From Perkinsus chesapeaki ATCC PRA-425 (lineage: Eukaryota > Protista > Perkinsozoa), in NCBI GenBank assembly GCA_013115145.1, contig JAAPAO010000184.1, positions 1 to 56,854 of the forward strand: a stretch of 56,854 nucleotides of DNA, written 5' to 3'. Both the position numbers and the translations under genes were made by a program. Position 1 is the stretch's first letter. Every line of letters starts with the position of its first letter. The notes under the pieces are model-generated. The model did no database searches, was not told where the DNA came from, and was given only the letters and a program-made list of their open reading frames with translations. Of this stretch, positions 11,627 to 38,873 are shown one piece after another.

Positions 11627-12610
11627 GATTTGAGTTTCCCAGCTCCTCTTGCCCGTAGCGTGCCTTCCTAAGCGCTTCTGTGGCGTTTTGCGGTTACCCG
11701 CGGCGCCCTATCTAGGCTTCAACGCTCTCCTATTTGCTTCCCCTCGCGGTTTCGCCATTTGATATGTACGACGTACATTGCACGTTAATTGCGACGCCGC
11801 TGGCATACCAAACTTGTGAATATATCGAGGCTCTAGCCGAACCTCTCCATAATAGCTCCTATGTGGAAGTGTGCGCTTTTTGACTTGGTGGTTTCTAGGG
11901 CACATAATGCTCAGATAGTCTTATGTTTTGCGACACGCTCTACGATCTGATGCGTGCCAGGGGAAACCCACTTGTGGCCCAAAAACGGTTAATGGAATAC
12001 AACTTGACACGTACCGATGTGAGGAGGTATATAGAGGGTTTAACCAATACTCAACTCAACGACAACAATCGGCTTGTCCATTCGGATAATAGGCTACTAC
12101 TCATGCGTTCGCTAAATAGCTGAAGAAACGCCGAAGCCTCACCTAAATACACATTTTACTGTACAACCGCTTCAAAGAGGAGCATATCAACCGGCTGCTG
12201 CCCAAATGTCGACCATGCATATGAAGGTATATGATGCTGTAACAGAGGCGAGTAGACACTGGTTCACACTCATCGTAAAGTGCAGCTTCTATACCAATTA
12301 TAATGGTCGCATCGGACATCTCACCAGAAGACCTGACACAGTTTAACTTATCATCACATTTCCACACATACATGACGAAATAAGATTATGCACTCTGGAA
12401 TGGGAAGACTGGTCCACCATTAGTGTACTCCGCAGGCTGATGCCACGGCACCTACAAGTCCGAAAACACTACGCTAAATACGCTTTATCGAACGTACCAT
12501 CTGATGCCTTAATCGGCCGTCATGAAGGAGGTGAATATCGAAACCACGCGAGCATCTCTTCACCTTCGTCACGCCAAAACTAAGTGCTGACAAAAAAACA
12601 GACATACGAG

Positions 12611-21203: not shown

Positions 21204-21565
21204 TCACAGTGTTTGTCAACTCGACACTTATACCCGAGTGGGGAAAAACTGCTTACAATTTCTTAGTTGGTCTGAAGCTTTTCTAAGCAATAATCGATCA
21301 TGGCGCCTATCGCCTGCGTGCGGACCAACTCCCACGCATGAACATGCTACCTTTCTGTCGACAATAGAGAGACAGAATAACCCAGTCTACAAGGGCTCGA
21401 ATCAATAAAAATAGATGAATACCACCGCAAGTGTGACAGTAGCCCTACTGGCGCCACTGCGTCATCATAGCAAAGAAATAATAACGAGAAATGACCACAT
21501 AATCATCCCTGAGTGGCCTTTGTGCGGAGGGCGCCTTTCGGCGCCGCCGTAGGGTATTGATGGTG

Positions 21566-21961
21566 TGTGAAGTATCGGGGGTAGCCGGAATAGAACTGTA
21601 AAAGGGCTAGGTTGTCAAAGGGGTGGTTCTCGATGTGCAAGAGTCCTAGTCGGCGTCTGATCCCAATACTTGGGGAACTCAAAGTCTGCTGGTGTAGAAA
21701 GGTCGATCGAACGGGCAATATAACCAACGAAGGAGGGAATCCCACGATGGTAATCGAATCAAAGAAAGAACCTTGAGCCAAGATGGCTACAGTATCACAA
21801 TCTCAATGACTCACAATCGCAGATCAATCGTTCAATTAGTAATACTAAGCTTCAACCCCCCCAAAAAAATGAAACGGCTGGCACGCATACCCATCACTGC
21901 GCGCGCGTCTCTCATCAACAAACTAATACAGATAAGCCTCTCCAAACGGCGGTTCTTCACA
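21566..21961 (-). repeat. 3' LTR (396 bp)
   Basis: No mismatch with 28181-28576 found on by-eye comparison. Confidence 0.97.
21772..21793 (-). other. Spliced-leader-like 22-mer plus GT donor in the 3' LTR
   Basis: Minus strand reads ACTGTAGCCATCTTGGCTCAAG|GT; the Perkinsus SL is ACCGTAGCCATCTTGGCTCAAG (21/22). Confidence 0.9.
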
Positions 21962-22137
21962 CCATAGAACCCATTATTCCGTAAGGATAATGCTTAGGGG
22001 TTTTCACTTCAATTCATCTAGCATAATCATAACTACCATATCATAATAACAGGGATATCATCATACGAATAAAGTCACAATAATTAGGCATGCTCATACG
22101 GATTACTTAATAACTACGATTACAATTACGTAGATAC

Positions 22138-25100
22138 TTATAGGCGCAATATCTCTCTCAATACTCTCTCGTCTTCATCAATACCATCAAAAATGTCATC
22201 AAAATACATATGGTCTTCGTCAGGATTAACAAGTTCTTCTTCATCATCACCTTCTTCAGGAAGTAGATAACCATAGGAGTCAATTACCTTCTGGGGATCT
22301 TCATAGCGCTTCAGGTTAAAGATAGATTCAAGATACTTAAGAGGTGTTCCATCCATCTTGCTGAGCTTGTAGACGGTGCCAGAACTGTTTACCTTCATCA
22401 CCTTGTACGGGCCAATCCATACTCCTTGCTGCTTGAGGTTACCGTGCTTGTAGCGTAACACCATATCACCAATCTTGAAGGACACGGTCGGGCCACGCTT
22501 TAGAGGGGCTTTTGCCATCCGATTACGGATCCTATCACTCCTCTCCAGCCAATAGTCAAAGTAGTCAACCATACTCTCGCACCTTCTAGAACTGACGTCT
22601 TGGCATATTTCAGTCAAGTCATCCAACAGTTTGTCCTTCTCTAACTCCATTAAACCAGGCAACCATTCGGATAACCGGCGACGTCCTTCTTGATCTTCGG
22701 AGGTGCATCCTAGTCCAGTTGGGTACCGGGGTTTCCTGCAAAAAAATAATTCATGAGGAGTAAGGCCTCCCATCTCTTGCAAGGGCAGTCGATTCATCAC
22801 CGATACCGAACTAGCTACCACTTCTTCAATAGTTACCTCTTGCTCCTTGGTCTCAGCGTCCATCAATCTCGATCGGATCTGTCGCAGCAAAATACCATGG
22901 AATCTCTCAAACAGTCCACCATAGTGTTGACAGTCACGAGGAAGAGTGGCGTAGGCGATGTTGTTGTTGTCCAGAAACCTTAGATAGTGGCTCGAATGGA
23001 AGGTAGACCCTGGATCAAAAATGACGGCGAATGGAGGACCCATGAGCGCAAATAACTTCTGCGTGGCGGCCTCCACCACTTCAGTACGGGTAGATAACAT
23101 CACTTCATAGATAGTTTGATAAGAACTTGGACACATCAGAGTTAGGACCCACTTCTTCCGACCATGGGTAGCATTAGACGAGGTCTCGAGAAAGGGGCCG
23201 GCGAAGTCCATACACCACACCTGGCCCGCATCGAACACAAGTCCACTGGGCCTCACCACTCCAAACGCTCGTCGTACACATCCTCGACGCTTTGTCCTCT
23301 GGCATGTTGAACAGGTATTCTCAATTTGGCGTACTAGGCGGCGAAGTTGAGGGGTATAATAATGCTGGGAGTAGACCGAGATGATCTTGCTTGGATCCGG
23401 GTGTCCCCAGGAGTCATGTAACTCCCAGATGAGCTTGATCACATCGTTCGACATTGGGACAACCGGAACTTGATGGCTACGCCGCTTCTCATTAACCACC
23501 GAAGTCACACCATGATAGTAGAGGATCTCACCCTCCATATGATATAGCCTTAACGATGCTGGTCGGTCAGCTTCAGGTGTGGTGTTGATGGTAGCAATCT
23601 TAGCGACGGTCTTGTGGTCAGCACTCTGCAACTCTAATATCTTCTCCACAGGGAAGTGGTCTTCTAAGTTGAGGGCCATGATGTCATCAACGTCGCCCGA
23701 AGCTCCAATGTTGGTACTTTCATCATCAGAGGCGTTGTTCTCACCGGGGGTCTCAAAGGAGAAGTCGTTCCGGATGGCTAGGTCAACTTCATCTTTCAGC
23801 TGCTCTAGGTCAATGGTGGGTGGTAGAGCTCCAGAATCAAGAGGCCTAGTGGCGATATCTGCCGGGTTAACAGCACCGGGTAGATGGAGTACTTTCACAG
23901 GGCGGCCTCCTTGCTGGGCAATTTCTCGTAGGGACTTCAGGGAGCCTCTCAGTTGCCGGTACTCGAGGGCCGAGATGGCTTTGATCTTCTTGTTCTTGTT
24001 AAGTCTTCTTAGTCTGTAGATAATCAGTTCGGAGTCTACAAATACCTTAAGGGTGATCTTGCGGTCGGCGTTGTCATGCTCCTTGATCATCTTCACGTAG
24101 TCAGCTACCATGCCTAATCCAGTGCAGTATGATAGGCTCTCCTTTTTAGGGATGGTCCAGCAGGCCTCCACCTTAGTCCACAGGTGGGTACTTCCTCGGA
24201 CTCTAGTGTAGTCACCATCATACAGGAGCTGGCAGCTTGCTTCTCCGGAGGCGTCGGTGAACAGATACAGTATTTCAGGTCGGGTCGTTCTGGGGTTCGC
24301 AGTCCTCTCTGGAGTAACCTCAATAAGAGCACGAGCAAGGCGGATTAAATTGGTGGCTACCTTCGGGTCGATGGCCATATCCCAGTCAGTAGAGGTCTCG
24401 AAGGCACGTCTAGCCAATAATCGCAAGCAGGACACCAGTTCCACTCCCAATCCGAGAGGGTCATAAAAGGCCATTACCAAGCCGAAAGCTGCCTTACGAC
24501 TCATGTTCTCAGCGGTCAGGTCTAGTGGTTCAGCCTTCGGAATGTACTTGACGGACAGCTTGTCGCGTCTCCAAAGGTATCCCAAGTAGGTAGTATCAGG
24601 ACGTTCCCAGGAACGATACTTCTTAATCTTGTTAGAGGGGAATCCATGACCTTCTAAGGCTTCATCAATCTCTTCAGAGGTAGCTTCCGCTTCCAATGAA
24701 TTCTTGCCCTTCGCCAAGGAGTCGTCCACATATACTGCCACCCTGTCGATCAGTCTAGTAGTAAGGGTAGTACTCTCAGGACCAGGGGGTGATGGAGCAG
24801 TGTTCTTGTCCAAGTCGGGGACCTCATCAGGGTTGGGGCTCGCAGTTGAGAGGGAGGTAGTCAACGAGCTCAGTGGATCGCTGATCTCGACGTCGATGTT
24901 ACTCTCTTGCTTCTTAGATCTCTGTTCACAGTAGTATAAGTAGGCATCCAACAGCTGACCTACCACCGGGTCTAGCCGCTTGGCCTCCTCGGGGTCGATC
25001 CTCCCTTTTCGGACGTCATACATGATCAGTGCAGCTCGGACGGCTTGGGTCAATCCACTAGGGGCAAAGTTGGCACCAAATATCATAGCCATCCACTGGT

Positions 25101-28100
25101 CAAAGTCGAGCTCATCAAGTTCATTCACCGTACACATCCCCAGGAAACGCTGGTCTTCTTCTCTGATCTCTATCCTGTGGAAGGCTTTCGAGAGGTCTCC
25201 CAGTACCACTTGGTCAGCAAGTCGGAAACAAGTCAAGTTACCGATCAGCGTCTGGCAGTAGAGGTCGTCGTTGGGAGGGTCGCCCTCGTAGCAGTAGTGG
25301 TTCAGCTGGGCGCTTGCGTCTAGTACCAGGCGGACTCGAGTACTTACCGCTCCAGGGCGCACCACTGGCATACTGGGGATAATGTGCTTCAGGGCACCGC
25401 GGTCGACCGGCTTGGTGAAACCTAGGTCTCGTAGCTCCTGGATAACCTTAAGGTACTCTTGACGCACTTCAGGGGTGAGCCTTCGGTTGACAGTGCGAGC
25501 GCGCCTCACAGCAGAGTCACTGCCACGATCGTCGGGTCGCTTGGAGCCTTTCCAAGGGATAGATAGCATGAACCTTCCACTGGACGATCGGGGAGTTGGT
25601 GGCTTGAGCTCCCAAGAAAAGTGACCGGGGTGACTATCATCATCATGGCCTTGATAAGGGCGAAGTACTCTGTTTACTTTCTGCTGCTGAGTCAACCCTT
25701 TGCTCTCTCCACCCTCAGGCGGATCAGTGTCAGGAGGGCATTCACTCTCAGCTAGCATAATCAGAATTTCAGCGGGCAACTCGGGGGGTTTGGTCTCGAG
25801 CTCAGCAGTGCCTTGCTCGGTGGGGGGGCGGTCAGTACCGATATAGCACAGCTCAGATAGTTGGCATTCCTCACGTGGTCGATCACAAAGCAGGGTAGTT
25901 CTGGTTGGCGGACCGCAGATGCTCTGAGTAACCTTCTGAGCTTCGTCCCCAACTAGCAGCACGTTGCGGTCGAGGAACCAGAGGGCCCCGAGGTCCTTCA
26001 ATAAATTAGTGGATAGTATCAGATCATGGGCCATCTCAGAGTCGACCACCACGAAGTCCTCAAGGGCCTCGGTACCATCTTCAAAGCGAACGGTCAGGGC
26101 GCAGGCTTTGCCGACAACCTCAGGGGCTCCACAGTTAGCAGTGCGAAGCCTTATCATAGTGTTCTCGAGGGTGCCGTGCTCGATAGTATCAAGGACGCTC
26201 TTGTGCATAACGGAGATCATAGCCCCACTATCTAGCAGGGCTGTCTTAGGTTGGCTGTCGTTGATGCTGATGTTGATCACTTGTGAAAGGCCACGATATG
26301 GAATAAGGCTGATAGCCTGGATGTCCTTGATACCGGGGACCTTACACTTGCATGCTAGGCTCGAGTGATGAAGTTTTCCACACCTACCGCACTTGGCACC
26401 GTAGGAGTCGTACTCACGAGGGCAGAAGTAAGAGCGATCATGGCATAACCCACAGAACACACACCGTTGATCCTCGAACTCTGCCGCATTCTCACACACC
26501 TCCGCAAGATGGGATACTCCCTCCCGGTCAAGACATCGACCACACCGGGCTCTTAAGATCTTCTTGTTGTTGTCGCTGTTGAGGATGGTTTGGTCATTCC
26601 TGATCTTCTTTTTAAAGTTGCCCTTAGATGGTCTAATAGTCACCGGAGGGGTAGGCTTGGCACCAGATGTAGAGACGATGGGGTCGGCGTCACATAGAAC
26701 TCCACAGACGTCCTTAGTCTTACAACTGGGATCCCAATGCACTTGGGCCCACGACTTGGCGGCCTTAACCACCTCTTGGTAGGTCATACCTTGGGTTCCT
26801 GGCAGCTTATAACCCCTCTCATCCAAGAACTTCTGACAAGCTGAAGGTAGAGCAGCATGAAGTCTACATTTCATCTCAGAGTCGGTCAGCTGGTTACCAG
26901 GCATCCGTCTGGTTCTCGCCACTTCTCTTGCAGTAGACTCAAACTCGCTCCAGAACGTTAGGAACTTAGTGCCCTTTCTTAACCACATTTGACTCCACCG
27001 AGTCTCTAAGGTATCAGCATCGGTGCCCGAGTAGATCTCGTCCAAGAACTGCCATAGAGAGTCAAGTCTCATCTTCCAATAGGAGCTATTAGTCTCATAG
27101 GCATCCTTGCCGTACTTGTCGAGGTCGTTCAAGTCTCGGTCGGCTTCATAGGTGTCTAATAGCCTCTGGATGTCCTTTGTCAAATTATGGCGTACAGTGA
27201 AGTACTTGGTGCAGTAATCACTCCAGACAAAGTCGGGCGAAGTTTGTAGCTTGTTCTTAAACTCACTGAGGGGAACCTCGTCATCTTCGCCAGACCACTG
27301 GTCGCTCAGAATGTAGTACTGTCGGCTCACTTGATAGTACACATAGCTGACATCTTTAGGGCCTTTCGGCCGGCTGCTAGAGTACCACCAATCCTTGCTC
27401 CAGTCGTTCCACCCATTCCAATCATTACTGCGGCTAGCATTATTAGGCTGGGCTTGCTCATATCGGTCAGACTGTTGGTAGGCCTCTAGTGTATTGTCGG
27501 AGGGTCGAGCGCAATCGGTAGGGTTCGGTGTAGATCTGAGTGGGGTCGTCATACTGGAGGACTCTTCACGTCTCTGGAGCATGGGCTTATGGATTACCGA
27601 TTCCTCAACCGTCCTCAGCGGGAGCACAACTTCGGTGCGGGGGTCGTAGTAGGCATAACTCACTTGTCCTCTGGGGTCATTCGCGGGGTTCACAACAGCG
27701 ACCTTAGAGGAGTCGTCAGCGGGGATGTTATCAGCATGAATCACTTGTCCTCTGGGGTCATTCGCGGGGTTCATAACAGCGACCTTAGAGGACTTGTCAG
27801 CGGGGTTGTTATCAGCATAAATCACTTGTCCTCGGGGGTCGTTCACGGGGTTCATAACCGCGACCTTAGAGGACTTGTCAGCGGGGTTTTGGTGAGACGT
27901 GGATGACCCACCACCAGCGGTCTCTAAGGGGTCATCACTGACCAAAGGGGGCTTGTGGTCATCGGTCTGCTCGGTGCCTTTCGCCTGCTTAGTGGGCGAA
28001 CTCGGCTCGGATTCACTATCAGAGCTGGTACCAGAAGGGTCGTTCTCCGATAATGGAGTCATAAATTCCTTCTGGGTACCAGAGTCAGTCTTCTTGAAAT

Positions 28101-28152
28101 CATCAGATCCCTTGCTATCATCGTCCTGAGCAACTCTGCGTCTTGGGGCCAT
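22138..28152 (-). CDS. Gag-Pol polyprotein, 2004 aa (Gag with three Cys/His knuckles, PR, RT, RNase H/Pao region, IN)
   Basis: PR LLDSGA; RT RLVLDAS, DLSKAF, FGANFAPSGL, YVDD; FYDPLG, FTDAS, VDSE, HLPGAVNPADIATR; IN H-x4-H...CSTC, MDFAGP, D..E; C-terminal GPY. Confidence 0.97.
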   Translation of the reverse strand: MAPRRRVAQDDDSKGSDDFKKTDSGTQKEFMTPLSENDPSGTSSDSESEPSSPTKQAKGTEQTDDHKPPLVSDDPLETAGGGSSTSHQNPADKSSKVAVMNPVNDPRGQVIYADNNPADKSSKVAVMNPANDPRGQVIHADNIPADDSSKVAVVNPANDPRGQVSYAYYDPRTEVVLPLRTVEESVIHKPMLQRREESSSMTTPLRSTPNPTDCARPSDNTLEAYQQSDRYEQAQPNNASRSNDWNGWNDWSKDWWYSSSRPKGPKDVSYVYYQVSRQYYILSDQWSGEDDEVPLSEFKNKLQTSPDFVWSDYCTKYFTVRHNLTKDIQRLLDTYEADRDLNDLDKYGKDAYETNSSYWKMRLDSLWQFLDEIYSGTDADTLETRWSQMWLRKGTKFLTFWSEFESTAREVARTRRMPGNQLTDSEMKCRLHAALPSACQKFLDERGYKLPGTQGMTYQEVVKAAKSWAQVHWDPSCKTKDVCGVLCDADPIVSTSGAKPTPPVTIRPSKGNFKKKIRNDQTILNSDNNKKILRARCGRCLDREGVSHLAEVCENAAEFEDQRCVFCGLCHDRSYFCPREYDSYGAKCGRCGKLHHSSLACKCKVPGIKDIQAISLIPYRGLSQVINISINDSQPKTALLDSGAMISVMHKSVLDTIEHGTLENTMIRLRTANCGAPEVVGKACALTVRFEDGTEALEDFVVVDSEMAHDLILSTNLLKDLGALWFLDRNVLLVGDEAQKVTQSICGPPTRTTLLCDRPREECQLSELCYIGTDRPPTEQGTAELETKPPELPAEILIMLAESECPPDTDPPEGGESKGLTQQQKVNRVLRPYQGHDDDSHPGHFSWELKPPTPRSSSGRFMLSIPWKGSKRPDDRGSDSAVRRARTVNRRLTPEVRQEYLKVIQELRDLGFTKPVDRGALKHIIPSMPVVRPGAVSTRVRLVLDASAQLNHYCYEGDPPNDDLYCQTLIGNLTCFRLADQVVLGDLSKAFHRIEIREEDQRFLGMCTVNELDELDFDQWMAMIFGANFAPSGLTQAVRAALIMYDVRKGRIDPEEAKRLDPVVGQLLDAYLYYCEQRSKKQESNIDVEISDPLSSLTTSLSTASPNPDEVPDLDKNTAPSPPGPESTTLTTRLIDRVAVYVDDSLAKGKNSLEAEATSEEIDEALEGHGFPSNKIKKYRSWERPDTTYLGYLWRRDKLSVKYIPKAEPLDLTAENMSRKAAFGLVMAFYDPLGLGVELVSCLRLLARRAFETSTDWDMAIDPKVATNLIRLARALIEVTPERTANPRTTRPEILYLFTDASGEASCQLLYDGDYTRVRGSTHLWTKVEACWTIPKKESLSYCTGLGMVADYVKMIKEHDNADRKITLKVFVDSELIIYRLRRLNKNKKIKAISALEYRQLRGSLKSLREIAQQGGRPVKVLHLPGAVNPADIATRPLDSGALPPTIDLEQLKDEVDLAIRNDFSFETPGENNASDDESTNIGASGDVDDIMALNLEDHFPVEKILELQSADHKTVAKIATINTTPEADRPASLRLYHMEGEILYYHGVTSVVNEKRRSHQVPVVPMSNDVIKLIWELHDSWGHPDPSKIISVYSQHYYTPQLRRLVRQIENTCSTCQRTKRRGCVRRAFGVVRPSGLVFDAGQVWCMDFAGPFLETSSNATHGRKKWVLTLMCPSSYQTIYEVMLSTRTEVVEAATQKLFALMGPPFAVIFDPGSTFHSSHYLRFLDNNNIAYATLPRDCQHYGGLFERFHGILLRQIRSRLMDAETKEQEVTIEEVVASSVSVMNRLPLQEMGGLTPHELFFCRKPRYPTGLGCTSEDQEGRRRLSEWLPGLMELEKDKLLDDLTEICQDVSSRRCESMVDYFDYWLERSDRIRNRMAKAPLKRGPTVSFKIGDMVLRYKHGNLKQQGVWIGPYKVMKVNSSGTVYKLSKMDGTPLKYLESIFNLKRYEDPQKVIDSYGYLLPEEGDDEEELVNPDEDHMYFDDIFDGIDEDERVLREILRL
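27652..27887 (-). repeat. 81-bp (27-aa) tandem repeat x3 in the Gag N-terminus
   Basis: tcacttgtcc recurs at 27660, 27741 and 27822; peptide unit NPADKSSKVAVMNPxNDPRGQVIxADN. Confidence 0.95.
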
Positions 28153-28180
28153 GATCTTGAGCTGAGGGATCCCGGTAGAA

Positions 28181-28576
28181 TGTGAAGTATCGGGGGTAGC
28201 CGGAATAGAACTGTAAAAGGGCTAGGTTGTCAAAGGGGTGGTTCTCGATGTGCAAGAGTCCTAGTCGGCGTCTGATCCCAATACTTGGGGAACTCAAAGT
28301 CTGCTGGTGTAGAAAGGTCGATCGAACGGGCAATATAACCAACGAAGGAGGGAATCCCACGATGGTAATCGAATCAAAGAAAGAACCTTGAGCCAAGATG
28401 GCTACAGTATCACAATCTCAATGACTCACAATCGCAGATCAATCGTTCAATTAGTAATACTAAGCTTCAACCCCCCCAAAAAAATGAAACGGCTGGCACG
28501 CATACCCATCACTGCGCGCGCGTCTCTCATCAACAAACTAATACAGATAAGCCTCTCCAAACGGCGGTTCTTCACA
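28181..28576 (-). repeat. 5' LTR (396 bp)
   Basis: Copy of 21566-21961; the Gag ATG lies 28 nt beyond its inner end. Confidence 0.97.
28387..28408 (-). other. Spliced-leader-like 22-mer plus GT donor in the 5' LTR
   Basis: Plus strand cttgagccaagatggctacagt, i.e. minus ACTGTAGCCATCTTGGCTCAAG, followed by GT. Confidence 0.9.
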
Positions 28577-29449
28577 GGTGCGCATAGTGCGCCACCGTTG
28601 TGCTGAACACAGTGCCTCTCCGAGGTTCATCATATCCGACTCGAGGATCACAGTTTAAAGAGAATGTAACAAAGGCGCTGAGGCCAGGACTCGTTCTTTA
28701 TACAATTCTCCCCATCTTTTTGGAAGAAATAGAAGACAATGAAAAAGAAAGATGAATATAGGTGGTGTTCCCACACCGTGCCTTCTTGTAGTAGTTTAAT
28801 TCGATACTTGCTTAGGAAGTCTACTGGGACCGGTAATATTAGCACGCATGATCAGTGAATGCCCTTCGTGGCGAGCGAGAATCATGATTTGTCTATATTG
28901 CGATGTCACAGGGAGGTGAATGTCACCCTTCACGGACCGGAAGACTGACTCAGGCGGACTTCCTAGCGACAGCCTCATTTGCGATTCTGGTAAGGAGTGC
29001 TACCAGACGGACTAGCGCCGGAATCCGTTGACGACGCCAACCTATTTATTAAATAGTATTTAAGGCTCCCTTAATCTTCCAGTAAGCTGGGCTCCATGGA
29101 ATTGAACCACGCCCTGGATCGAAGTCAGCACACCAAGGTTCGCTCAGCTCCTTCTCACAGGAGCAGAATAGCGACTCTTTACAGTGTGGTGTTCGATGAT
29201 GTTTGAGACTTCTAACACTTACAGTGAATTTCGGTTGTAACAGCTTGTTCACTGTCTTCGAGAAGAGGCTCGAATATGTGCCCAGTAAGTTCGCGTTGGC
29301 TTCTAGTTCGCCGAGTTATGAGTTCGGATCCCTCTGGGCTTTGACACTTAATACAACCAAAGATGAGCATGTTTATAGAGAATGATATTAATTCATGGCG
29401 GGGCGTACCGCAAAAAGATGAGCAGGTTTCGCAAACCAGTGACGATACT

Positions 29450-30643
29450 TCACAGTGATGCACCGCATTCAGCAGCTGACAGTAAATTCTCATCGTCCTG
29501 CTGCGGGTCGACAAAGTCAGCACCTTCATCAAACTCCGTCTCTTCCTCGGATGCAAACCTATAGGCAAAGATATGCAACAGCTGTGTAGGAGCGATCGTA
29601 CAGGATTGCTTGAACCATCTCCTTCAATTCAGCAGCTGTCTTCTGTGATACCTAACATCACCATAATGTCCGCCAAGCAGTGCAATGCTCACGTCCACTT
29701 CTTGCAATAGTATTTCCACCTGCCTCAGCTTGCCGAAATAGAAGTCCCTCTCGCGCTCCAAGCACACAGCACTCTCCCTACATCCAATGCCGCTCGCTGA
29801 AAGCGGTCCATCAAGTGGCTTACTTAAGCTCTTCGTATTCATCAATAGTTACAAAACGTGAAGGATCGACAGCCGGCTGATGCTGTTGCTGCATCATCGT
29901 CCTTCCACCGACGTTGCCTACATACGTGGTTTCAAGGTGTTAAACTTCAAGTCGCCAGAGGACCTCTCGGTTTAACTTGTCCAGCGGCTCTCCCCGCCGG
30001 CGCCGGACGCGGTGCCCCAGCATTCCTCGGGGCATAGTTTTCCTTGTTGATGAGGCTCGGCGGAGCGGCATTGGCGGCCCAAGGTGGCAGCTGGCATCCT
30101 TGACGCCTTCCCACAGGATCGTAACTGAAGGCATTACTTCGATCTCGTCAGAGTCAAATGATTATTGCCAACCTTAGAGCCACATCTGTTGCTACAGCAC
30201 CGTCATGGAAGGCCTTCATCCACTGTAGGAACTCCAAGTTGTCCTGGAACTTCCCTCTGCCAAAGACTTTATCGGTAAAGAAGGGGCATCCGTCGGGAGG
30301 CAGAGTGTTCTCCCGCAGCCTATCATGGACCTTACTTGCATAACTTATCAACATCGATGTGCTTGGCAATGTTGCACTGGTCGAATGCTCTCTGTAAGAT
30401 CTTGTAGTTGTGTACATATTCATAATCCACCTTAGCCAACCAGTTCACTTTCTTAAGCGGCACACGCCCTGATCTGATACTCAGGGGCAGAAGCGAAGGC
30501 AACTCACCAGGAAAGGCTGAATCGATAATTTGGCAGTAGATGGCTCCAGAGGCACATTGCTCTATCTTAGTAAGAGACGTCTGTAATAACGTATTAACCC
30601 AGTCAAGTAGCTGAGACTTGGAGAGGGAGTATGCAGGGTCCAT
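29450..30643 (-). CDS. EB1: EB1/RP-EB family microtubule end-binding protein, multi-exon
   Basis: CH domain LSKSQLLDWVN...ASGAIYCQIID...NYKILQRAF...QDNLEFLQW; EBH motif ERDFYFGKLRQVEIL; acidic tail. Confidence 0.92.
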
Positions 30644-30799
30644 TTTAGGGGAAAGCAGCAACAGCTACATTCGAGAGCCTCAAGGGGGAACCAAAGACGG
30701 CTTAGGGTAGGGAGAAACACCATTGTAGACTTTGCCACACATGTTGATGCTTCATTACATGCATTTATAAAGTTGTCAGAAAGGTATCTTCACCGATCA

Positions 30800-32199
30800 G
30801 TAAGCTTCATCTGGTCACATCACAGCACAACAGCCCCTTTCATGACCTCCTTGAAACCACAAATCAGAATCGACTTCAGTTGACCTCGTCACATCTTCCC
30901 TCCTGGCAACGGTTCTTCCCCTGCCAGACACAGCCCGCATTCCAAATCCCAGTCCGTATGACAATCGCTCCGTTAGACAGTCTAAAGGAGAGACTTCCTA
31001 CCTTATAAAATTGCGGGGCGGCGTTTCACATTCGGCATCCTCCTTACAAATAACATATCCCTTTCTTCGGGCACGCATGGCTGACATAAAGCTACATCCG
31101 ACCAAGCGAGGGGCATCTGGTACCATTGAAGCTCAACTTCAGGGGCCAACTCGGCAGCATCATCTCGGCAGGCTCGAACCTTAGCAATACCACTCCTCGC
31201 TTCGATGACTCATCGTCCTCCATATACCTCGATAGCATTCCAAATTAAAGATGCATGCACACCATGCTCACAATGATCAGTGGCACAATTTATCCATGCC
31301 ATGATGACAAACATTTTTTCGCGAGGAAAGGAATTTTCGGACCGTATCTCCCAACAACGTGAAAAGTATCTTCCCGGATGATTCAGTGATTTATAGCCAA
31401 ACGGTGGCCCCCGCACTTATTCGAATGAGATCAGCTGTACTTCTGTACGACATAATCACTTAATCACGCTTACTTCCCTTTCCCTCTTCGCCCCCCAGGT
31501 AACACTGAACGCATCTGCAACCGCGCTTTCCTCTCCTGCCGTTGCTGACGAAGCTGCTCCTGCATAGGAGGGGAACTTCGATAACATAAGGACCACGCTG
31601 AGAGTTCGTAACCACACAATCGACTGTCCCCGAATCTTCCAGGCTGTTGGCTTTAATCGACTGGCTATCGTGTACTCACGAGCGTTGTTGTTGACATCGC
31701 AGTACGATTTGCAGTGGAAGCATTAGCGAACCCAACGCCGCCGCCCTACTCTATACAACTTCGCTCTTCGCTCGTCCGACAGCACCTCATAGGCCTCCAC
31801 TATCTCCTTAAATCGTATCTTCACTTCACCAACACTCAAGCCTTCCCCAGAGCCCCTACCTCGGCAGTGGCCTTTGCCTCCTGACTCAGATGCTTATCAG
31901 GATGGCATTCTCGTGCCAGAGCGATGTAAGCCTTGCGGACCTACACCCATGAGACTCATCGGAAACCGTATCATATAATCCATTTTAATGATGTGCATTT
32001 ATTGGCAGCTCCATCTCTTCCTCACCTCCTCCGAGGTAGGATGCTCGCTGGAAAGGCCCAAGGAATGGTAGTGCGTCCGCTCCTCGAGGCCGCCATCGGA
32101 AGCCCAAGTGGAAGGCGAATGTACTCGCGACTTTCGAGATGGCGAGGCATTTCCAGGCGCTCTGTCAGGTAATGATGAATGATGGCTGGAGAAGGGCAT
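30800..32199 (-). CDS. DnaJ-domain protein, multi-exon; 3' end uncertain
   Basis: THYHSLGL...VRKAYIALARECHPDK...FKEIVEAYEVLSD (J-domain with HPD). Confidence 0.8.
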
Positions 32200-32548
32200 T
32201 TAAGGAATAAACAACAGAGGACTGGGTGATGCGGATAAGACGCAAACGGCCATTGCTAATGGGCCTCTTTATTGACCGAAGGATTTCTTTATCCTACAAT
32301 TTCGTAAATGAGTCGTATGCGTACAACACTGATACTATAGAGCCTGCTGTTCCAGCAGCATCAGCCTCATGCCCTTAAATATTCTTCCTTTTATTATCAA
32401 GCCCTGTTGCATGCACTTTACTATCAACTAACAAAGCCCCTATACCCCCCACATTATTTAACCAACACAACAACTACACAGCTCTGAATGGGTGGTGATT
32501 GTACAAGGTAAGCAGCAGCAGCTACCAGGCTACTTCCGACGCCTCTGA

Positions 32549-33788
32549 TCAGCCTTCTGCTGTATACGCTAAAAAACACATCATATCTCCCACTACCCCC
32601 CTCTCTACCTCCCTCAATTGTTTCCTCATAGCCTCCTTTTTCTCCATTGTCTCTAGGTCGTCACCCTTCTTCCCCTTACTGCCTGTACTAGCATCACTCG
32701 AATCACCCGCAGCATGCCTTCGAGCATCCGCCTCCTCAGCCTCTTTCTTTTGTATCATCTCTTTATGCTAAGCGAAGAGCGATCCTCCCAACTTTCGAGC
32801 CGCCCACCCAACCTGCTCTAATCGGTAAAACTGCAGTCCCTGTGGCCAGACGTTCCTGCCAAAACCCTCCTCGGTCATTTCTGACTCCTTAACAATATCT
32901 TCCATTTCAGCATTGAAGTCCCTCTCAGCCTGCAGTACTCCTTCCCAGTACCTACCGACGCCGATCACTGCCCACTACTAGCTACCCGACTCAGCAACAT
33001 ACCCCGGCACGGTGAGACAAAAATTTCCTAGATACTTTAATCATATTTCGCCTCACTTCCGCCTATCGAAATCAACCGTATCGGGTTCTACAATCCCTCA
33101 CCGAATCCTTCTCAAAAATACATCTACTAACAAGATCCGAAATGTGCAAAGATTTTCTCCAAGTCCCCGCCCCTCCTCCACATGGCCGACATATGCTTTA
33201 TTCCTCCTTCCCATATTACTTATCCCCGACTAGCTTCTTATCCATCATCCTGGCCGCTCCAGGCTTATCCCTCTGCAATTGGGCCAAAACATATACACAA
33301 CCTATGCACCGCTTCAGCAGCAACGCCTTCAACTTGCGCTGAAACCAAACAACTAAGCCGCTGTGATTGCCTTCCCTCACCTACCCTGTCCGCATCCGGT
33401 ATCTCATGCCTTATAATTCGCGTCATCTCCGGCAGTTCAATATCGGATATAACTCTACACAACAACTGTCCCCCCCCCCTCCACCACAGCGCCTACCTGC
33501 CCTTCCCCTCCTTTACTAGAAACTCCTGTAGCACCTGTTCTTTGTAGTCCAAGTACGCATTAAGCTCTTCCTCAGGCAAATGGATTTCATACTCTCCCGT
33601 GCCACCCGTCGCCTTGAGGAATTCCGACGTCGCCGTAGATTGCTTCCGGTAGTCCTACCACCAAATGACTTCAACCAGTCAAGCCAGGACCTCACTTCAA
33701 AAATAATGGTAGCTAAATAAGCACATGCTGCCAGCACTACTGCCAGGGCTATGTACGGCCAGTACTCTGCGAAGATCTCAGTTAGCAT
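32549..33788 (-). CDS. Single-TM protein, possibly Sec66/Sec71-like; multi-exon
   Basis: N-terminal TM YWPYIALAVVLAACAYLATII; YWEGVLQAERDFNAEMEDIVKESE...W resembles the Sec66 C-terminal pattern; charged coiled-coil tail. Confidence 0.4.
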
Positions 33789-33909
33789 TTGAAAACAAAA
33801 GAAGGCCGCCGCAAATAGCAGCCACGAAACAACAACTGCTAGATGGTCAAGTCCCCCCGCCGCCACCACCAGCAACGCCTCTCCTCAATTGATAGAAACG
33901 TTGGTACAC

Positions 33910-36900
33910 TTAGCGTTGGTCTAGAGGTCGTATGGACATCGCAGGCTCAAGCACTACCATTGCCCGCCGCAAGTGGCCTCGAACGGCATTGGTCAGCTCC
34001 TCGCTAGCTGTTAGCTTCGATGAAGATTCATCAGAGGTTGATTGGGAAGCCTCTGGTGCTCCTAGTAGTCGAACTTCTCGTTCAGCAGTATTGACTTCAA
34101 TTGCCTGCTGGGGCTTAGATCCCACAATGGTGGCCTACAAGCTCACTATGAAAGATACTCCACAGGTTGATTGGGCAGCACCTTGAGGATTCCTCGATTT
34201 AAGTCTACCTCCTCTACTGGACCAACATTGTCGTGAAGTATCGTTCGAACTACCTCAACCTGATGACCAGCGGTATCACTCTCACGACGACGACGACAAA
34301 CTGACATTCCTAATTGAACTTTCATGACGAGCCCTTCAGAGGATGATTCAATTGAAATTGTCAACAAGCGGAAATCACAGTCAACGCACAGTCGAAGCCC
34401 TTCCTAGGCAGCAAAGTCCTATTAAACCAGCAGTCAAGCTATGAGAATATGATGCTCTCCATCTCCCCCTGCATTACCATTTTCCCAAACCGTTCCCCCT
34501 CCGATTCGTTCATCTTAGCCTCCTTCTGTATCTCCACCGCAGCCGCTGCCGCGCCATTCGGGTCTTCACTTGTACCTAACCCGAGACAATCAGCAGCCTA
34601 TCCTACCCTGGCAGCTCACCATCAACAGGCGTGCAGGCCGAATCCATCAAGAGCAACAACAAAGAATCGGCAACAAGATCCGCCATGGGAGAAGCCGACC
34701 ACCGTACTGTAATGAGAGACGGATTTAGCTGAGAAGTTCACCGAAATGAAATCGACTGTGCCACTCGAAGTTCCTACATGTCCTTCATCAGAGACCTTCT
34801 TTTGATGAACATACACCAGGCCAGACACTACAATACCAGTAGATTCGCCTACCACAAAAACGTAAAACAAGAAACGCTTCGCTCCGCTCAGTTACCTTCA
34901 TGAACCTCTCGTGCTGTCTTCGCCGACATAACATCGACATCTTCAAACAGCTAAACAGGACCTCTCTTCTCTCCCCACACCAGCCCACCATCCTACCTGG
35001 GACACCGCCTCGTTTGCAAATGCTACCAGATCAAAACCCGACACCGCGTTCAGTTTAACACTCATCTGCAGCTTTGCCGTTCTTATGCCTAAACCACCCA
35101 GATGATCTATGCCCCCCTGGACGCTGCACCTCCATACTAGTGAAGTCCGGTATCTCCTCCGCGGCAGTTTCCGCCGACACCAGCAATTGGCTGTCATATC
35201 CCGACCTAAAAGGCACCATAAGAGCAATCAAATCCTGTTAAATGCTCCTACGCCGGGTCCTCCACTAACAACGCCGTCGACGAACTGCCCTTATGTCGCC
35301 GTGATCTCTGACCAGAACATGTCCATCTCCATTCCAATAATACCCACACCCACCTTATTGGACCTCTGATGAGGCTTCTCATCGGCATCTGCTACCCTAC
35401 CCACTGCCGAGGCGAACGCTCTGCCTGATCACAAGATGCTGGACAACCGGGGAGGACACCAATAGTACGAGTCATGAACTGTATCTCAACAGACTGAGTG
35501 TTAGCCGGAGTGTTACATGAAGTACCAGGAAAGTCCTGACAAAATGGCAAACATGAATCGCTTCGCTCCGCTAAAGCCGCCTTACCAGCCCAAGCTTGTC
35601 CTGCAATCTTCGCATTAATGTTTGCTCTCCATGCACCAAGCACACATGTGGGACGTTAAGAGCTTGGATGAAGTCTCTCGTCTGAACAACAGCAACTACC
35701 AGCCTTTTTCTGACACCTCTAGCCATACTTGTCCGTAGTCACTGTGAGCCGAGAAGCTGATAGACTTCGTAGAGCACCTCACAGGCAGTTTTCGGCCATC
35801 TGTGAGGGTTAGAGTGTCTGGGTCATTCTGCAGGTCATGTGCAAGCGTACCAGCAACACTATAACCGGTAATAATAACCTAACGACACCGATCACCCCCG
35901 ACTGTAGGCCTATCCACATCCTACACCATTCTTCGGATCGGGTGCCCATTGCTCGAACAGTTCCCTACTAGTACCGCTCTGAAGCATACCTAAGGGGGAG
36001 AGTTGTGGAGCAATGGAAGAGCCAAGATGGAAATGTGAGCTATAATGCCTCGGTATCAATATTAAGCAGATGTTGAAACGATATAAATAAATTTACTAAT
36101 AATAACAGTGAGACGCTATAGAAGTCCGATACTGGTACTGTACAACTGGTATGCAGTAGCTATAAATTTTGTGGAAGGCGTATTAGTAGTGGTATGATAG
36201 TGTGACGATACTATACGAAAAAAGGCCATAGGGCTGTGGGGACGAGTCAATGAGCCTTGCTCATGACGTGCAAGACCTCCACGACAAGATAACAAACGAG
36301 TATTATGTTATTTGGTACCTATCTATGCCACACATTGTCATCCAGCTCAGCACACAGCTCTACAGTGGCATGCTCTTCGAAGGCTTTAAGAATCTCAAGT
36401 AGACTTATTATTATCATAAACGGTTGTAGTAATGAATAGGGACAGCTAAGATATCATATAATAAGAAAAATGCCAATGACAATCAAATCGATCAACCGTT
36501 TCATCTTAACACTGCTCGCATTGTTAATGCAGCTTACCAGGTGCGGCCATGACGACACAAGGCATGCCGGGTGCCAATACGATATCCTCCCATTCTTTAC
36601 AGGAATTATCAGGCATATTTTGAACATATCTAAAAGATTCCAAACAGGTTGATTCAGAAACCTCCGCAAGATACCCACTTCATAGTCCTCCATATATTAC
36701 GGCAGTTATTAGCCTCTTCCTACAACAACCACGCACTGCTGTGTCACGCGCCACAAAACTCCACCTCCTACCTGAACTTTATCACTGCATAATGCCGTGT
36801 AGGTCTCGAAGATCCTAAGGCATTTGTTGGCCATCGGCGTGGCGTAGAATATGGGTATTCTCTGAAAAGAATACAAATTGCTGAAATATCCTATGAGTTC

Positions 36901-38873
36901 TTCCAGAATCGTTCTAACCCAGGATACATCAACCCCGCTTCAACCTAAGATACGTCCTTACCTGCAATTCCTCATGTTTCCCCCAATACTCTTCTAGCAA
37001 CAGTAGAAGCTCCTGAGCTCTACCCAGAGCAAAAACCGGCAGGAGGCATTTCCCGCCAGTGCGGACGATCTGATGTAATTTCGTGGCGCGTGAACTTAAT
37101 TACCGCCCTACAATACCTCATGAACACTGCTTAGGAACCGAGCTTCCCTTTCTTTTCTGAAACACAAGCGTAAAGTCACGCGCCACAAAAATACGATTCC
37201 CCAAATTGCGTTGATGATGGCGTATGTTTGATGTTTAGACTATAGTATTGCCCGTCGTTGTCAGTTTATATCACCGTCGTCGATATACCCCCCTTTGTAG
37301 TCAACAAGTGCCAATAAAGTGCTGTAGGCGACGGCTTGCCACGAAGGGGAAACCCCTTGGAGACGTGCTGGCCAGAGTAACGCAGAGGACCTCGACCATA
37401 ACACATACAGTAACCTTTTACCTTAGCTGCACTAAGATCGGTTTCCAACAATTACTTGCCCAAGATCGCGTCCCCACAGCAGCCCCCCAAGACCCATCCT
37501 TCTCAATCCTCCCTAGAGTTACCTCGGCTCATGCAGTTGTACTCCATAAGTGCTCTCAACAACCAACGCGTGAATAGGAGCTGGCACCACCTCTGCATGA
37601 GGGAGATGCCTATCGACCTAATAAAATATCTTTTGCACGCCTGCGCACGAAGATACGTTTACCTCCCGACTGAAGTCTCCTGTATAGAGTAACCTCACCC
37701 CATCAATCTCAACCACGAACATTGCAGCGCCGAGTACATGACCTATACCAAGGTATAAACTTGAGGAAAAGTCGGTATGAACTAACCTGCTCGATACGCT
37801 GTGAATGATATCGGGCCTGCAGGGGTGGATATAGTGACCTGTTAGGAATGACGATGATGAGGAGGAGGAGCGGTCTGTTCGCTGCGCAAAATACCGCAGG
37901 ATTTGCTTATTTTTTAACACGTGATTTAATCCACGATATAAAGAGATTTTATTAACGTACTTTTCAAGACCCTGTATGAAAACCGTTTTCCTGGATAATA
38001 ACTTCATAGATATTAAAACCGGGCGGAAAAATTATCGTCAACTTTTCCTGCCTGAGCTACTTATATAAGCGAGCATCACTGTCCATATATTCCACCAGTC
38101 CGAATCAACATCACGGTACCACACTAGCACCCCTCTTACTGTCTGATGAAATGTACAAGTATCGATCCTCTGCATACATTTGTCAATATCAGTCCGTCCA
38201 TACCTACACAACAACCGTCATACCGCTCTTTCCTCAAATCCTACACTTGATCCTCTGCTGCCGTTATCTTAGACACCCTAGCATAGTCCTACCGACAACA
38301 TCACCACTCCTACCCATTGGCCCTCCTCCTACTTGCCACAGCAATCGGCAAATCGGTCTGGTCGGGTGCGTCATATATGTTCGCCCTTTAAAGTCCGTCC
38401 TCCCTATCTAAACCAGCACGGCTCAACTTCCACAGCAGCGACAAGTCCCTACCAGGTACGGCACCGCACCCGAGTGGTCCAAATGGAAATGCGTGACCAA
38501 GAGGAGATCGATGTTAGTGAGCTCCGCAGTTGAAAGATGGTCGAAGAAAGGCAACGCGGTCATCCTATCACACTCCTCGTAGGTAAACGGTTTTCTCGGT
38601 AACTTCTCACCCTGTATGCGCCGGATGAATCCCACAATCGAACATAACAGTTCGGCCTCGGAACTTCAGTATCACACAACTTCGACCGACCTAAGATACG
38701 TTCACAAAGGCGTATCTTTAGGTCGGTTGACCCACCTCCTGCCCTGCTCCCAACGGCGTTATTTCTAATGTATCCATTGACGCTGCAACGCCCGGCGTCG
38801 TAGACTCACTCGGCAATACCACTACCGGAGCGGCCGCAGAGGACTTTGCCGATGTAGGAGGGAGAGGTGACAT
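33910..38873 (-). CDS. CPSF3: CPSF 73-kDa endonuclease (metallo-beta-lactamase/beta-CASP), many exons; C-terminal extent approximate
   Basis: [11 protein letters not shown]; THFHLDH; GHVLGAAMF; YTGDFSRE; ESTYG; [14 protein letters not shown]; SFSAHSDY; LVHGE. Confidence 0.93.

What the first reader, a model, noticed from the sequence alone, without database searches (positions are those of the whole stretch)
28387..28408. LTR retrotransposon carrying the host spliced leader with an intact GT donor in both LTRs
Seen: the sense strand of each LTR contains ACTGTAGCCATCTTGGCTCAAG|GTTCTTTC, 168 nt from the LTR 5' end (copies at 28408-28387 and 21793-21772), with the AGCCA/TGGCT hairpin intact. Known: Perkinsus mRNAs are trans-spliced to ACCGTAGCCATCTTGGCTCAAG (dinoflagellate DCCGTAGCCATTTTGGCTCAAG). 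In SL RNA genes the exon is followed by GT, whereas relic SLs on retroposed genes are followed by arbitrary sequence. The single difference is CG to TG. Inference: the element has built an SL (or SL RNA gene) into its U3/R boundary. It could (a) start its genomic RNA as an SL-headed mRNA mimic and so avoid trans-splicing that would remove R/U5/PBS; (b) cis-splice the SL to the Gag ATG, separating mRNA from genomic RNA; or (c) spread mobile SL donors through the genome. I know of no description of this arrangement but cannot search the literature.
Basis: partly seen in the sequence, partly recalled or inferred. Interest (0 to 1): 0.92.

Follow-up and report, generated by a model that had tools for sequence, protein, structure and literature searches.

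The report
Host spliced leader built into LTRs
A young, intact jumping gene in the clam parasite Perkinsus chesapeaki carries an exon-only copy of the host's 22-letter mRNA leader at the U3/R point of both its end repeats, as do several unrelated jumping-gene families in this genome. This probably lets them replicate although their RNA gets that leader spliced on, and the GT that follows the leader here looks like chance.

Summary
Observation confirmed. ACTGTAGCCATCTTGGCTCAAG lies on the minus strand at 28408-28387 and 21793-21772, 168 nt into two identical 396-bp LTRs. The element is 7,011 bp (21566-28576), with TG..CA ends, a 4-bp target duplication, an empty paralogous site, and one 2004-aa gag-pol ORF of Bel/Pao type. 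The host is Perkinsus chesapeaki.

Only the SL exon is present; neither the promoter nor the intron of the two real SL RNA genes is there, so the source was spliced RNA, not a captured SL gene. This is not special to this element. The genome has 32 perfect 19-nt SL cores. Verified LTR pairs on three other contigs, from deeply divergent lineages, carry one 33-52 nt before the LTR end (206 nt here). About 13 unrelated flank families have it, followed by arbitrary bases.

GT follows consistently in only 2 of these families, with a pyrimidine at +3, so it is probably chance. SL nt 1-3 vary and are passed on to both LTRs; core variants are never shared.

Best reading: the SL is the start of R, so the trans-spliced RNA stays colinear with the LTR. 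RNA evidence is thin: one SL-headed cDNA contig reading out of the 3' LTR.

I found no published description. First readers of this scan flagged five similar elements elsewhere in this genome.

The parts
21566..28576 (-). Complete LTR retrotransposon, 7,011 bp
   Evidence: Identical LTR pair. TG..CA termini. The two flanks are contiguous in a paralogous empty site on C1928.
28181..28576 (-). 5' LTR, 396 bp
   Evidence: 100% identical to 21566-21961.
21566..21961 (-). 3' LTR, 396 bp
   Evidence: 100% identical to 28181-28576.
28387..28408 (-). Exon-only copy of the host spliced leader in the 5' LTR (ACT start); inferred first 22 nt of R
21772..21793 (-). The same SL copy in the 3' LTR
   Evidence: RNA contigs from runs X1-X4 start 2 nt before SL nt 4 and run through the LTR end into the flank.
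28409..28576 (-). Inferred U3 of the 5' LTR (168 nt). Fast-evolving; contains TGTGAG 28 nt before the SL
   Evidence: In older family copies the sequence upstream of the SL aligns poorly or not at all, while the sequence downstream stays 79-87% identical. Motif enrichment.
28181..28386 (-).
   Evidence: Conserved within the family. No similarity to the SL RNA intron.
28166..28180 (-). Primer-binding-site-like block TTCTACCGGGATCCC directly after the 5' LTR
   Evidence: The same block sits 210 nt after the SL core on C3238 and just after the LTR in P. olseni relatives. The primer RNA was not identified.
22138..28152 (-). Single gag-pol ORF, 2004 aa. Protease about residues 626-720, weak RT 982-1045, Pao (Peptidase_A17) 1225-1351, integrase zinc domain 1573-1623
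21962..21980 (-). Polypurine-tract-like stretch just upstream of the 3' LTR
   Evidence: Read directly. The block GGGTTCTATGG is shared with the P. olseni copy.
28577..28580 (-). Target-site duplication CACC, 5' side
21562..21565 (-). Target-site duplication CACC, 3' side
21262..21565 (-). Host flank transcribed together with SL, R and U5 of the 3' LTR
   Evidence: About 300 loose letters of the RNA contigs match here. The same span is the repeat shared with C1928.

Best explanation
The 22-mer is an exon-only copy of the Perkinsus chesapeaki spliced leader, sitting at the U3/R boundary of both LTRs of a young, intact Bel/Pao-like LTR retrotransposon.

Origin (inferred): the copy came from the element's own trans-spliced RNA through reverse transcription.

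Working model (inferred):
1. The element RNA is made from U3 or from a host polycistron.
2. It receives the host SL by trans-splicing at the AG that ends the LTR-encoded SL. The mature genomic RNA then starts with the SL followed by R/U5 and stays colinear with the DNA.
3. Minus-strand strong-stop DNA ends in the SL complement. It can pair with the SL copy in the 3' LTR for the first strand transfer.
4. SL nt 4-22 are thereby rewritten from the host SL (or held by strong selection) in every cycle.
5. Nt 1-3 are taken from the 3' LTR template, possibly because the cap-proximal nucleotides block the reverse transcriptase, and so they drift.

The same solution is found in several unrelated LTR families of this genome. 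The GT after the SL in this family is incidental.
For: Shown:
- Element anatomy, target duplication and empty site.
- Homology to the real SL RNA genes stops exactly at the exon's 3' end. The real genes share a promoter and an intron (86-92% identical to each other) that the LTR lacks.
- The genome holds 32 perfect 19-nt cores and only 2 SL-gene-like loci.
- Verified LTR pairs on C8, C61 and C2061 carry the SL 126-374 nt into the LTR and 33-52 nt before its end. All encode PR/RT/IN-type polyproteins.
- Those lineages are only 25-27% identical to each other in RT, or show no BLASTP hit at all to this element. An integrase ORF lies upstream of the SL at L027.
- Nt 1-3 are family-specific and identical in both LTRs of each pair: ACT, TCC, TCT, TAC. 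They vary widely overall (also AAT, ATC, GCC, GAT, GAC, GTT). Of the 16 one-mismatch hits to the 22-mer, 15 have the mismatch at nt 1 or 2; the pattern itself allowed C or T at nt 3 and nt 12.
- No core variant occurs in both LTRs of a verified pair. The one variant seen twice, on C140 and C3294, lies in unrelated LTR families.
- Old copies of this family show 1-3 core changes of 19, and indels at the U3/SL junction, while U3 diverges faster than R-U5.
- cDNA contigs in four runs (two samples, one study) start at the SL of the 3' LTR and read through U5 into the host flank.

From papers:
- Reverse transcription of Perkinsus SLs is commonly incomplete, and this is ascribed to 5' modifications (PMC2868825).
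- In C. elegans, the full-length Cer1 RNA has to escape SL1 trans-splicing (PMC3315495). This shows the conflict that the arrangement here would solve.
Against: - No RNA 5' end of the element itself was available. No indexed RNA run held the gag region.
- The cDNA contigs come from RT-PCR libraries that probably used an SL primer. An internal SL in a longer transcript could have been primed, and the first letters may be primer sequence.
- Trans-splicing at the encoded SL's terminal AAG has not been shown.
- A P. olseni relative with the same primer-binding block has 100% identical LTRs and 99.86% identical copies. It has no intact SL; its resemblance to the SL is not significant (p about 0.17). 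The SL is therefore not obligatory for this lineage.
- Perfect core conservation is also what strong purifying selection alone would give.
Confidence: 0.55

Rival explanations
1. SL mimic by direct transcription. Transcription starts at or within a few bases of the encoded SL, so the genomic RNA is born with an SL-like head. It is not trans-spliced, and the sequence is kept by selection (for translation, export, or to avoid losing R/U5/PBS).
For: - Same positional evidence as for the main explanation.
- Nt 1-3 variants are inherited, as expected if the 5' end is DNA-encoded.
- A shared TGTGAG / purine-rich motif lies within 40 nt upstream of the SL in 5 of 18 families, against 4 occurrences in 11 kb elsewhere. 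It could be a core promoter placing the start near the SL.
- The 3' LTR read-out RNA also fits promoter activity.
Against: - It must explain why all 19 core positions are invariant in 32 copies across unrelated families, with a sharp break at nt 3/4. Selection usually gives graded constraint.
- Many copies start with T or G, which is unusual for a Pol II start.
- A DNA-encoded head would lack the SL RNA's cap modifications.
- The original acquisition still needs a trans-spliced RNA.
Confidence: 0.25
2. Passenger relic. The SL was copied into LTRs by occasional reverse transcription of trans-spliced element RNA and has no present role. It looks perfect only because the insertions are young.
For: - Relic SLs on retroposed genes are well known in dinoflagellates, and intron-less SL copies are numerous in P. 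marinus (PMC3101222, PMC2868825).
- 71 environmental contigs carry the same core in front of ordinary genes.
- The SL decays in dead copies.
- A P. olseni relative lacks an intact SL.
Against: - Entry of an SL into both LTRs needs a rare non-homologous strand transfer, yet at least 4 verified and about 13 candidate families have it at the same relative place.
- Within the window family the SL is present in copies only 78-85% identical. It has therefore persisted through long family history while U3 turned over.
- No core variant is shared between the two LTRs of any verified pair, whereas nt 1-3 variants are.
Confidence: 0.13
3. Functional splice donor. The GT after the SL is used either in cis (SL joined to the Gag start, giving a subgenomic mRNA) or in trans (the LTR acts as a mobile SL RNA gene). 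These are the reader's readings (b) and (c).
For: - AAG|GT is present in both LTRs and in most copies of this family.
- The Sm-like site of Perkinsus and dinoflagellate SLs lies inside the exon (PMC3101222).
Against: - GT is at chance level across families. A relative sharing the primer-binding block has TT.
- One family copy has AT.
- The +3 base is always a pyrimidine.
- There is no similarity to the SL RNA intron, and the predicted fold does not pair the donor as in the real SL RNA.
- No joint was seen in the RNA contigs, which read straight through the GT.
- P. marinus SL-like loci gave no small RNA.
Confidence: 0.04

Closest known systems
Relic spliced leaders on retroposed genes of dinoflagellates (Slamovits and Keeling 2008, as cited in PMC3942190 and PMC7245778), and the intron-less SL-like loci of P. 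marinus (Zhang et al. 2011, PMC3101222)
   Same: An exon-only SL copy in genomic DNA, followed by arbitrary sequence, and derived from reverse transcription of trans-spliced RNA. It often starts with T rather than A.
   Different: - Here the SL is inside both LTRs of autonomous LTR retrotransposons, at the U3/R position. It is therefore copied through the LTR replication cycle, not by one-off retroposition of a host mRNA.
- No truncated tandem relics were seen. Such relics are the signature of re-splicing at the SL's internal AG.
- Zhang et al. described their loci as tandem repeats with variable downstream sequence and did not link them to LTRs.
SLACS / CZAR / CRE1 site-specific non-LTR retrotransposons of trypanosomatids
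   Same: A retroelement physically tied to the host spliced leader.
   Different: Those elements insert into SL RNA genes and are non-LTR. This element carries only the SL exon inside its own LTR, sits in an unrelated repeat, and is an LTR element.
Cer1 (Ty3/gypsy family) of C. elegans (PMC3315495)
   Same: An LTR retrotransposon in a host that trans-splices an SL. Trans-splicing interacts with the element's RNA.
   Different: In Cer1 the full-length RNA must skip the SL1 acceptor, and only a spliced 2.4-kb mRNA carries SL1. The paper describes no SL in its LTR. Perkinsus elements encode the SL in the LTR, so a trans-spliced RNA would keep a usable R.
Retroviral / LTR-retrotransposon R region
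   Same: A short repeat present at both RNA ends that mediates the first strand transfer. Its position is between U3 and U5.
   Different: Here the start of R would be a host-derived, host-wide 22-mer. It may be defined by a trans-splice acceptor rather than by a transcription start. This is inferred, not shown.

Membership tests
LTR retrotransposon | Two direct long terminal repeats with TG..CA ends | tested here: met
   396-bp LTRs, 100% identical, starting TGTG and ending CACA.
LTR retrotransposon | Short target-site duplication and a definable empty site | tested here: met
   CACC on both sides. Both flanks map onto positions 1501-1504 of a paralogous copy on C1928.
LTR retrotransposon | gag-pol coding region with protease, reverse transcriptase and integrase | tested here: met
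   2004-aa ORF. Integrase_H2C2 1.5e-9. Aspartyl protease and RVT_1 only as weak hits. No PDB sequence match.
LTR retrotransposon | Primer-binding site next to the 5' LTR, complementary to a tRNA | tested here: inconclusive
   A block conserved with C3238 and with P. olseni relatives follows the LTR. It does not begin with TGG, and no matching tRNA was found (one search found only a tRNA-Val gene, and I did not compare it with the block).
Bel/Pao superfamily | Pao-type pol signature with PR-RT-RH-IN order | tested here: met
   Peptidase_A17 (Pao) scores 27.4 bits against a cutoff of 22.3, and lies between RT and IN. P. olseni relatives carry the same Pfam hit. No RT phylogeny was made.
SL RNA gene | SL exon followed by the conserved intron, a T-run terminator and the gene's own upstream promoter | tested here: not met
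   Only the exon (and a GT) is shared with the two real genes on C411 and C2742. The fold differs. Rfam found nothing here at gathering threshold.
Relic SL from reverse-transcribed trans-spliced RNA | Homology to the SL RNA gene ends exactly at the splice junction, and downstream sequence is unrelated between loci | tested here: met
   About 13 unrelated flank families, all ending at ...CTCAAG.
Relic SL from reverse-transcribed trans-spliced RNA | A truncated second relic (starting at CCAT...) behind a full SL, from re-splicing at the internal AG | tested here: not met
   None within 90 nt downstream in any P. chesapeaki locus. Seen only in two environmental contigs.
SL-gene-targeting non-LTR elements (SLACS/CZAR/CRE type) | Insertion at a fixed site inside SL RNA genes; non-LTR structure | tested here: not met
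   The flanks are a non-SL repeat. The element has LTRs.

The most novel reading that the evidence does not exclude
In Perkinsus, LTR retrotransposons of several lineages use the host spliced leader as the start of R. The 5' end of their genomic RNA is made by trans-splicing at the LTR-encoded SL rather than by transcription initiation. They could then be expressed from host polycistrons without a promoter of their own. The SL core would be rewritten from the host SL RNA in every replication cycle, while the cap-proximal 3 nt are not copied and drift.
Probability: 0.4. Interest if true: 0.85.

Novelty: new variant of a known kind. Interest (0 to 1): 0.68.

Why it matters
SL trans-splicing replaces the 5' end of an RNA. 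For an LTR element that would destroy the 5' copy of R, which is needed for the first strand transfer. How LTR retrotransposons live in hosts that trans-splice most mRNAs is hardly studied; in C. elegans, Cer1 full-length RNA simply has to escape SL1.

If the reading here holds, three things follow:
- Perkinsus elements show a second, convergent solution: writing the host leader into the LTR.
- It explains the many unexplained intron-less SL copies reported in Perkinsus genomes in 2010-2011.
- It gives a natural marker of RNA 5' ends and of reverse-transcriptase behaviour at the modified SL cap.

There are also practical points. These SL copies confuse SL RNA gene counts and gene models: here the NCBI model fuses host exons with the element's ORF. 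SL-primed metatranscriptomes will pick up LTR read-out RNAs.

Tried and rejected
- Captured SL RNA gene: rejected. Alignment and fold against the real genes share nothing beyond the exon.
- GT donor: rejected as a general feature.
- RNA support was limited. The look-up of sequencing runs gave only four small 454 RT-PCR marine metatranscriptome runs from one study. They cover SL nt 4 to the LTR end plus the 3' flank, and nothing of gag.
- Protein searches with the gag N-terminus found nothing. The pol region found only the NCBI model of this locus and one P. olseni protein. The C2061 polyprotein found only itself.
- The representative search gave P. olseni fragments. Most of their contigs were too short to hold LTRs, and one protein was not on record.
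- The two P. olseni loci with LTRs hold a decayed SL (L059) or no significant SL (L066). Cross-species conservation of an intact SL could therefore not be shown, and P. marinus could not be reached.
- The metagenome scan for the SL core gave 71 contigs, but the ORFs tested were ordinary genes, not retroelements.
- A core variant shared by C140 and C3294 turned out to lie in different families, so it says nothing on inheritance.
- C140's apparently missing U3 is a diverged U3, not a strong-stop-DNA insertion. This was judged by eye.
- C3238 has no second LTR within 9.5 kb.
- TATA-like motifs upstream of the SL are inconsistent between families.

Full report
**1. Observation**

The 22-mer ACTGTAGCCATCTTGGCTCAAG occurs twice in the window, on the minus strand at 28408-28387 and 21793-21772. 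No match is expected by chance, even allowing three mismatches. It is followed by GTTCTTTC. Both copies lie in 396-bp direct repeats that are 100% identical: 28181-28576 and 21566-21961.

**2. The element**

- On the minus strand the repeats begin TGTG and end CACA.
- They are flanked by a 4-bp duplication, CACC, at 28580-28577 and 21565-21562.
- A paralogous copy of the target sequence on contig C1928 has the two flanks contiguous. Both duplicated tetramers map onto the same four bases. The ends 21566 and 28576 are therefore firm.
- Between the LTRs lies one open frame of 2004 aa, 28152..22138.
- Its Pfam matches are: weak aspartyl-protease (626-720), a faint RVT_1 match (982-1045), Peptidase_A17/Pao above its cutoff (1225-1351), and the integrase zinc domain (1573-1623). 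This is the PR-RT-IN order with a Bel/Pao signature.
- Directly after the 5' LTR sits TTCTACCGGGATCCC. The same block follows another SL-bearing LTR on C3238 and the LTRs of P. olseni relatives. It behaves as a primer-binding site, but I could not name the primer.
- The host is Perkinsus chesapeaki. The NCBI protein that contains this ORF is so labelled.
- Identical LTRs and an intact ORF indicate a recent insertion.

**3. What the SL copy is not**

Two loci in the genome (C411, C2742) look like real SL RNA genes. They share the upstream sequence, the exon ACCGTAGCCATCTTGGCTCAAG, an intron beginning GTAAATATCCGG, and a T-run. Aligned with them, the LTR shares only the exon and the GT.

The real SL RNA folds with its donor paired to the 5' ACC. 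The LTR sequence does not. Rfam finds nothing here at gathering threshold.

So the LTR holds the exon alone. That points to spliced RNA, not an SL gene, as the source.

**4. It is a genome-wide arrangement**

- A pattern search of the 41.7-Mb assembly found 27 near-perfect 22-mers. It found 32 perfect copies of the 19-nt core GTAGCCATCTTGGCTCAAG, 9 with one change and 19 with two.
- The 21-nt S-type leader of P. marinus is absent.
- Apart from the two genes, every copy is followed by sequence unrelated to the SL intron.
- By their flanks the copies fall into about 13 unrelated families.
- Self-comparison shows further LTR pairs with the SL inside the LTR: C8 (SL 126 nt in, 48 nt to the LTR end), C2061 (138 nt in, 52 nt to the end) and C61 (374 nt in, 33 nt to the end). 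Here the figures are 168 and 206.
- Their internal regions encode zinc-knuckle, protease, RT and integrase domains.
- C8 and C61 are about 40% identical to each other and about 26% to C2061. None gives a BLASTP hit to this window's polyprotein.
- At another locus (L027) an integrase ORF ends 137 nt upstream of the SL.
- At least three deeply separated LTR lineages thus carry the leader at the same relative place, near the 3' end of the LTR, where U3 meets R.
- First readers of this scan had flagged five other such elements, and an SL-capped LINE, elsewhere in this genome. I did not map those notes onto my loci.

**5. The GT**

Across the families the two bases after the SL are TT, AT, CT, TG or GT. 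GT is consistent only in this family and one other. It appears as an A/G variant in single members of two more. The C3238 family, which shares the primer-binding block, has TT.

Within this family the variants are GTTC, GTTA, GTCG, GTTG, GTTT and ATTG. All have a pyrimidine at +3. From general knowledge of U1/U6 recognition, that makes a poor donor.

The RNA contigs read straight through the GT. Zhang et al. 2011 tested comparable intron-less SL-like loci of P. marinus by 3' RACE and RNA blots and obtained no clear products (PMC3101222). I therefore treat the GT as chance and readings (b) and (c) as unlikely.

**6. The pattern of conservation**

- The first three SL bases vary widely: ACC, ACT, ACG, TCC, TCT, TAC, AAT, ATC, GCC, GAT, GAC, GTT.
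- They are the same in both LTRs of each verified pair: ACT/ACT, TCC/TCC, TCT/TCT, TAC/TAC. They also recur within families. They are therefore transmitted through retrotransposition.
- By contrast, no variant of the 19-nt core occurs in both LTRs of a verified pair. The one variant seen twice lies in different families.
- In the 22-mer search that allowed one mismatch anywhere, 15 of 16 mismatches fell at nt 1 or 2. The pattern itself allowed C or T at nt 3 and nt 12.
- In older copies of this family (78-85% identical LTRs) the core has 1-3 changes of 19. The U3/SL junction carries indels. One copy has an extra partial, partly inverted SL.
- In the same copies, sequence upstream of the SL is much less alignable than sequence downstream.
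- So the SL is perfect in young copies, decays in dead ones, and marks the border between a fast-evolving part and a slow-evolving part of the LTR.

**7. RNA**

Only four small 454 RT-PCR marine metatranscriptome runs from one study held any of the query. In each, one contig has two unaligned letters, then matches from SL nt 4 (28405) to the exact LTR end (28181) with one differing letter. It then continues for about 300 letters that do not fit the internal region.

Those letters match the host flank of the 3' LTR, 21565 downwards, with one mismatch in 30. So an SL-headed cDNA that begins in the 3' LTR and reads out into the flank exists in nature, with this same insertion junction.

Caveats:
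- The library type and the contig start suggest an SL primer. This is my inference. An internal SL in a longer RNA could then have been primed, and the first letters may be primer.
- Contigs cannot show true starts.
- No run held the gag region, so the element's own 5' end is unknown.

**8. Mechanism**

*Shown:* an exon-only SL at the U3/R position in several unrelated LTR families; inherited nt 1-3; an invariant core in live copies; decay in dead ones.

*Inferred:*
1. The leader entered the LTRs when trans-spliced element RNA was reverse-transcribed.
2. It is kept because it makes a trans-spliced RNA colinear with the LTR.
3. Strong-stop DNA ending in the SL complement can then pair with the SL copy in the 3' LTR.
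4. If trans-splicing uses the AG that ends the encoded SL, the product equals the encoded sequence and no tandem relics build up. None are seen.
5. Each cycle would rewrite nt 4-22 from the host SL. Nt 1-3 would come from the 3' LTR template if the reverse transcriptase stops short of the modified cap-proximal bases.

Joseph et al. 2010 report that SLs in P. marinus cDNAs are always incomplete and ascribe this to 5' modifications (PMC2868825).

The element lies downstream of host exons on the same strand; the NCBI model even fuses them. Expression from a host polycistron, with the 5' end set by trans-splicing, is therefore conceivable.

The main rival is direct initiation at the encoded SL (a mimic). 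A TGTGAG / purine-rich motif enriched just upstream of the SL in 5 of 18 families could be a core promoter and fits that rival.

A passenger-relic reading is weakened by the recurrence in many lineages and by persistence through family history. It is supported by a P. olseni relative that has identical LTRs and near-identical copies but no significant SL.

**9. Comparison with what is known**

- Relic SLs on retrogenes are well described in dinoflagellates (as reviewed in PMC7245778 and PMC3942190).
- Zhang et al. 2011 and Joseph et al. 2010 noted many intron-less SL copies in P. marinus without linking them to LTRs.
- In C. elegans, Cer1 full-length RNA is the form that is not SL1 trans-spliced (PMC3315495).
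- Four full-text searches combining spliced leader, LTR, retrotransposon, Perkinsus and DinoSL found no paper describing an SL inside LTRs. The library does not cover most subscription journals.

I file this as a new variant of known kinds: the relic SL and the LTR R region.

**10. Verdict**

The SL-gene and GT-donor ideas are not supported. The arrangement is general in this genome, which makes it more interesting than a single odd element. The mechanism still lacks direct RNA evidence.

Noticed in passing
window 22141-37838, minus strand: The NCBI gene model (3245 aa, named Integrator complex subunit 11) joins host exons at about 31045-37838 to the retrotransposon ORF at 28134-22141. It is an annotation chimera.
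   Followed up: partly
window 28416-28441 and the 40 nt upstream of the SL in L010, L023, L055, L060: TGTGAG occurs within 40 nt upstream of the SL in 5 of 18 unrelated SL-bearing families, against 4 times in 11 kb of other sequence from the same loci. GAGAGG-like purine runs are also common there. This may be a promoter or processing signal.
   Followed up: partly
L069-L139 (71 metagenome contigs): The exact 19-nt Perkinsus-type SL core occurs in 71 environmental contigs, 41 of them with a TCC start, followed by GC-rich arbitrary sequence. The ORFs tested were ordinary genes (globin/EF-hand, TAGT glycosyltransferase, aspartyl protease). Two contigs (L119, L128) show a truncated relic right after the SL. 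These are probably retrogenes or transcripts of uncultured perkinsid-like alveolates.
   Followed up: partly
window 27640-27886: Three tandem copies of an 81-bp unit (85-87% identical) lie inside the gag part of the ORF.
   Followed up: no
L031 (G000:C3455, about 4353-4400): An old LTR copy of this family has an extra ATCCGTAGCCTGGC in front of the SL. This is a partial SL that forms an inverted repeat with the start of the next one, exactly at the U3/SL junction.
   Followed up: no
window 21262-21565 and 28577-28650; L058 (G000:C1928): The element is inserted in a repeat of about 385 bp that has an uninterrupted paralogue (86-90% identical) on C1928. The RNA contigs end at the edge of this repeat.
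   Followed up: partly
L066 (P. olseni JABANP010000249.1) 2025-13219: This is a tandem arrangement: LTR, LTR plus gag start, internal region, LTR, internal region. The element is related, with the same primer-binding block. Copies are 99.86% identical and the LTRs 100% identical, but the LTR has no significant SL match.
   Followed up: partly
window 28153-28165: The last six SL bases, CTCAAG, recur between the primer-binding block and the Gag ATG. CTCAAG also appears shortly after the same block on C3238 and in the P. olseni LTR. The meaning is unknown and it may be chance.
   Followed up: no
G000:C1761:65-153: The 15-nt primer-binding block TTCTACCGGGATCCC occurs three times at 37-nt spacing near a contig start.
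   Followed up: no
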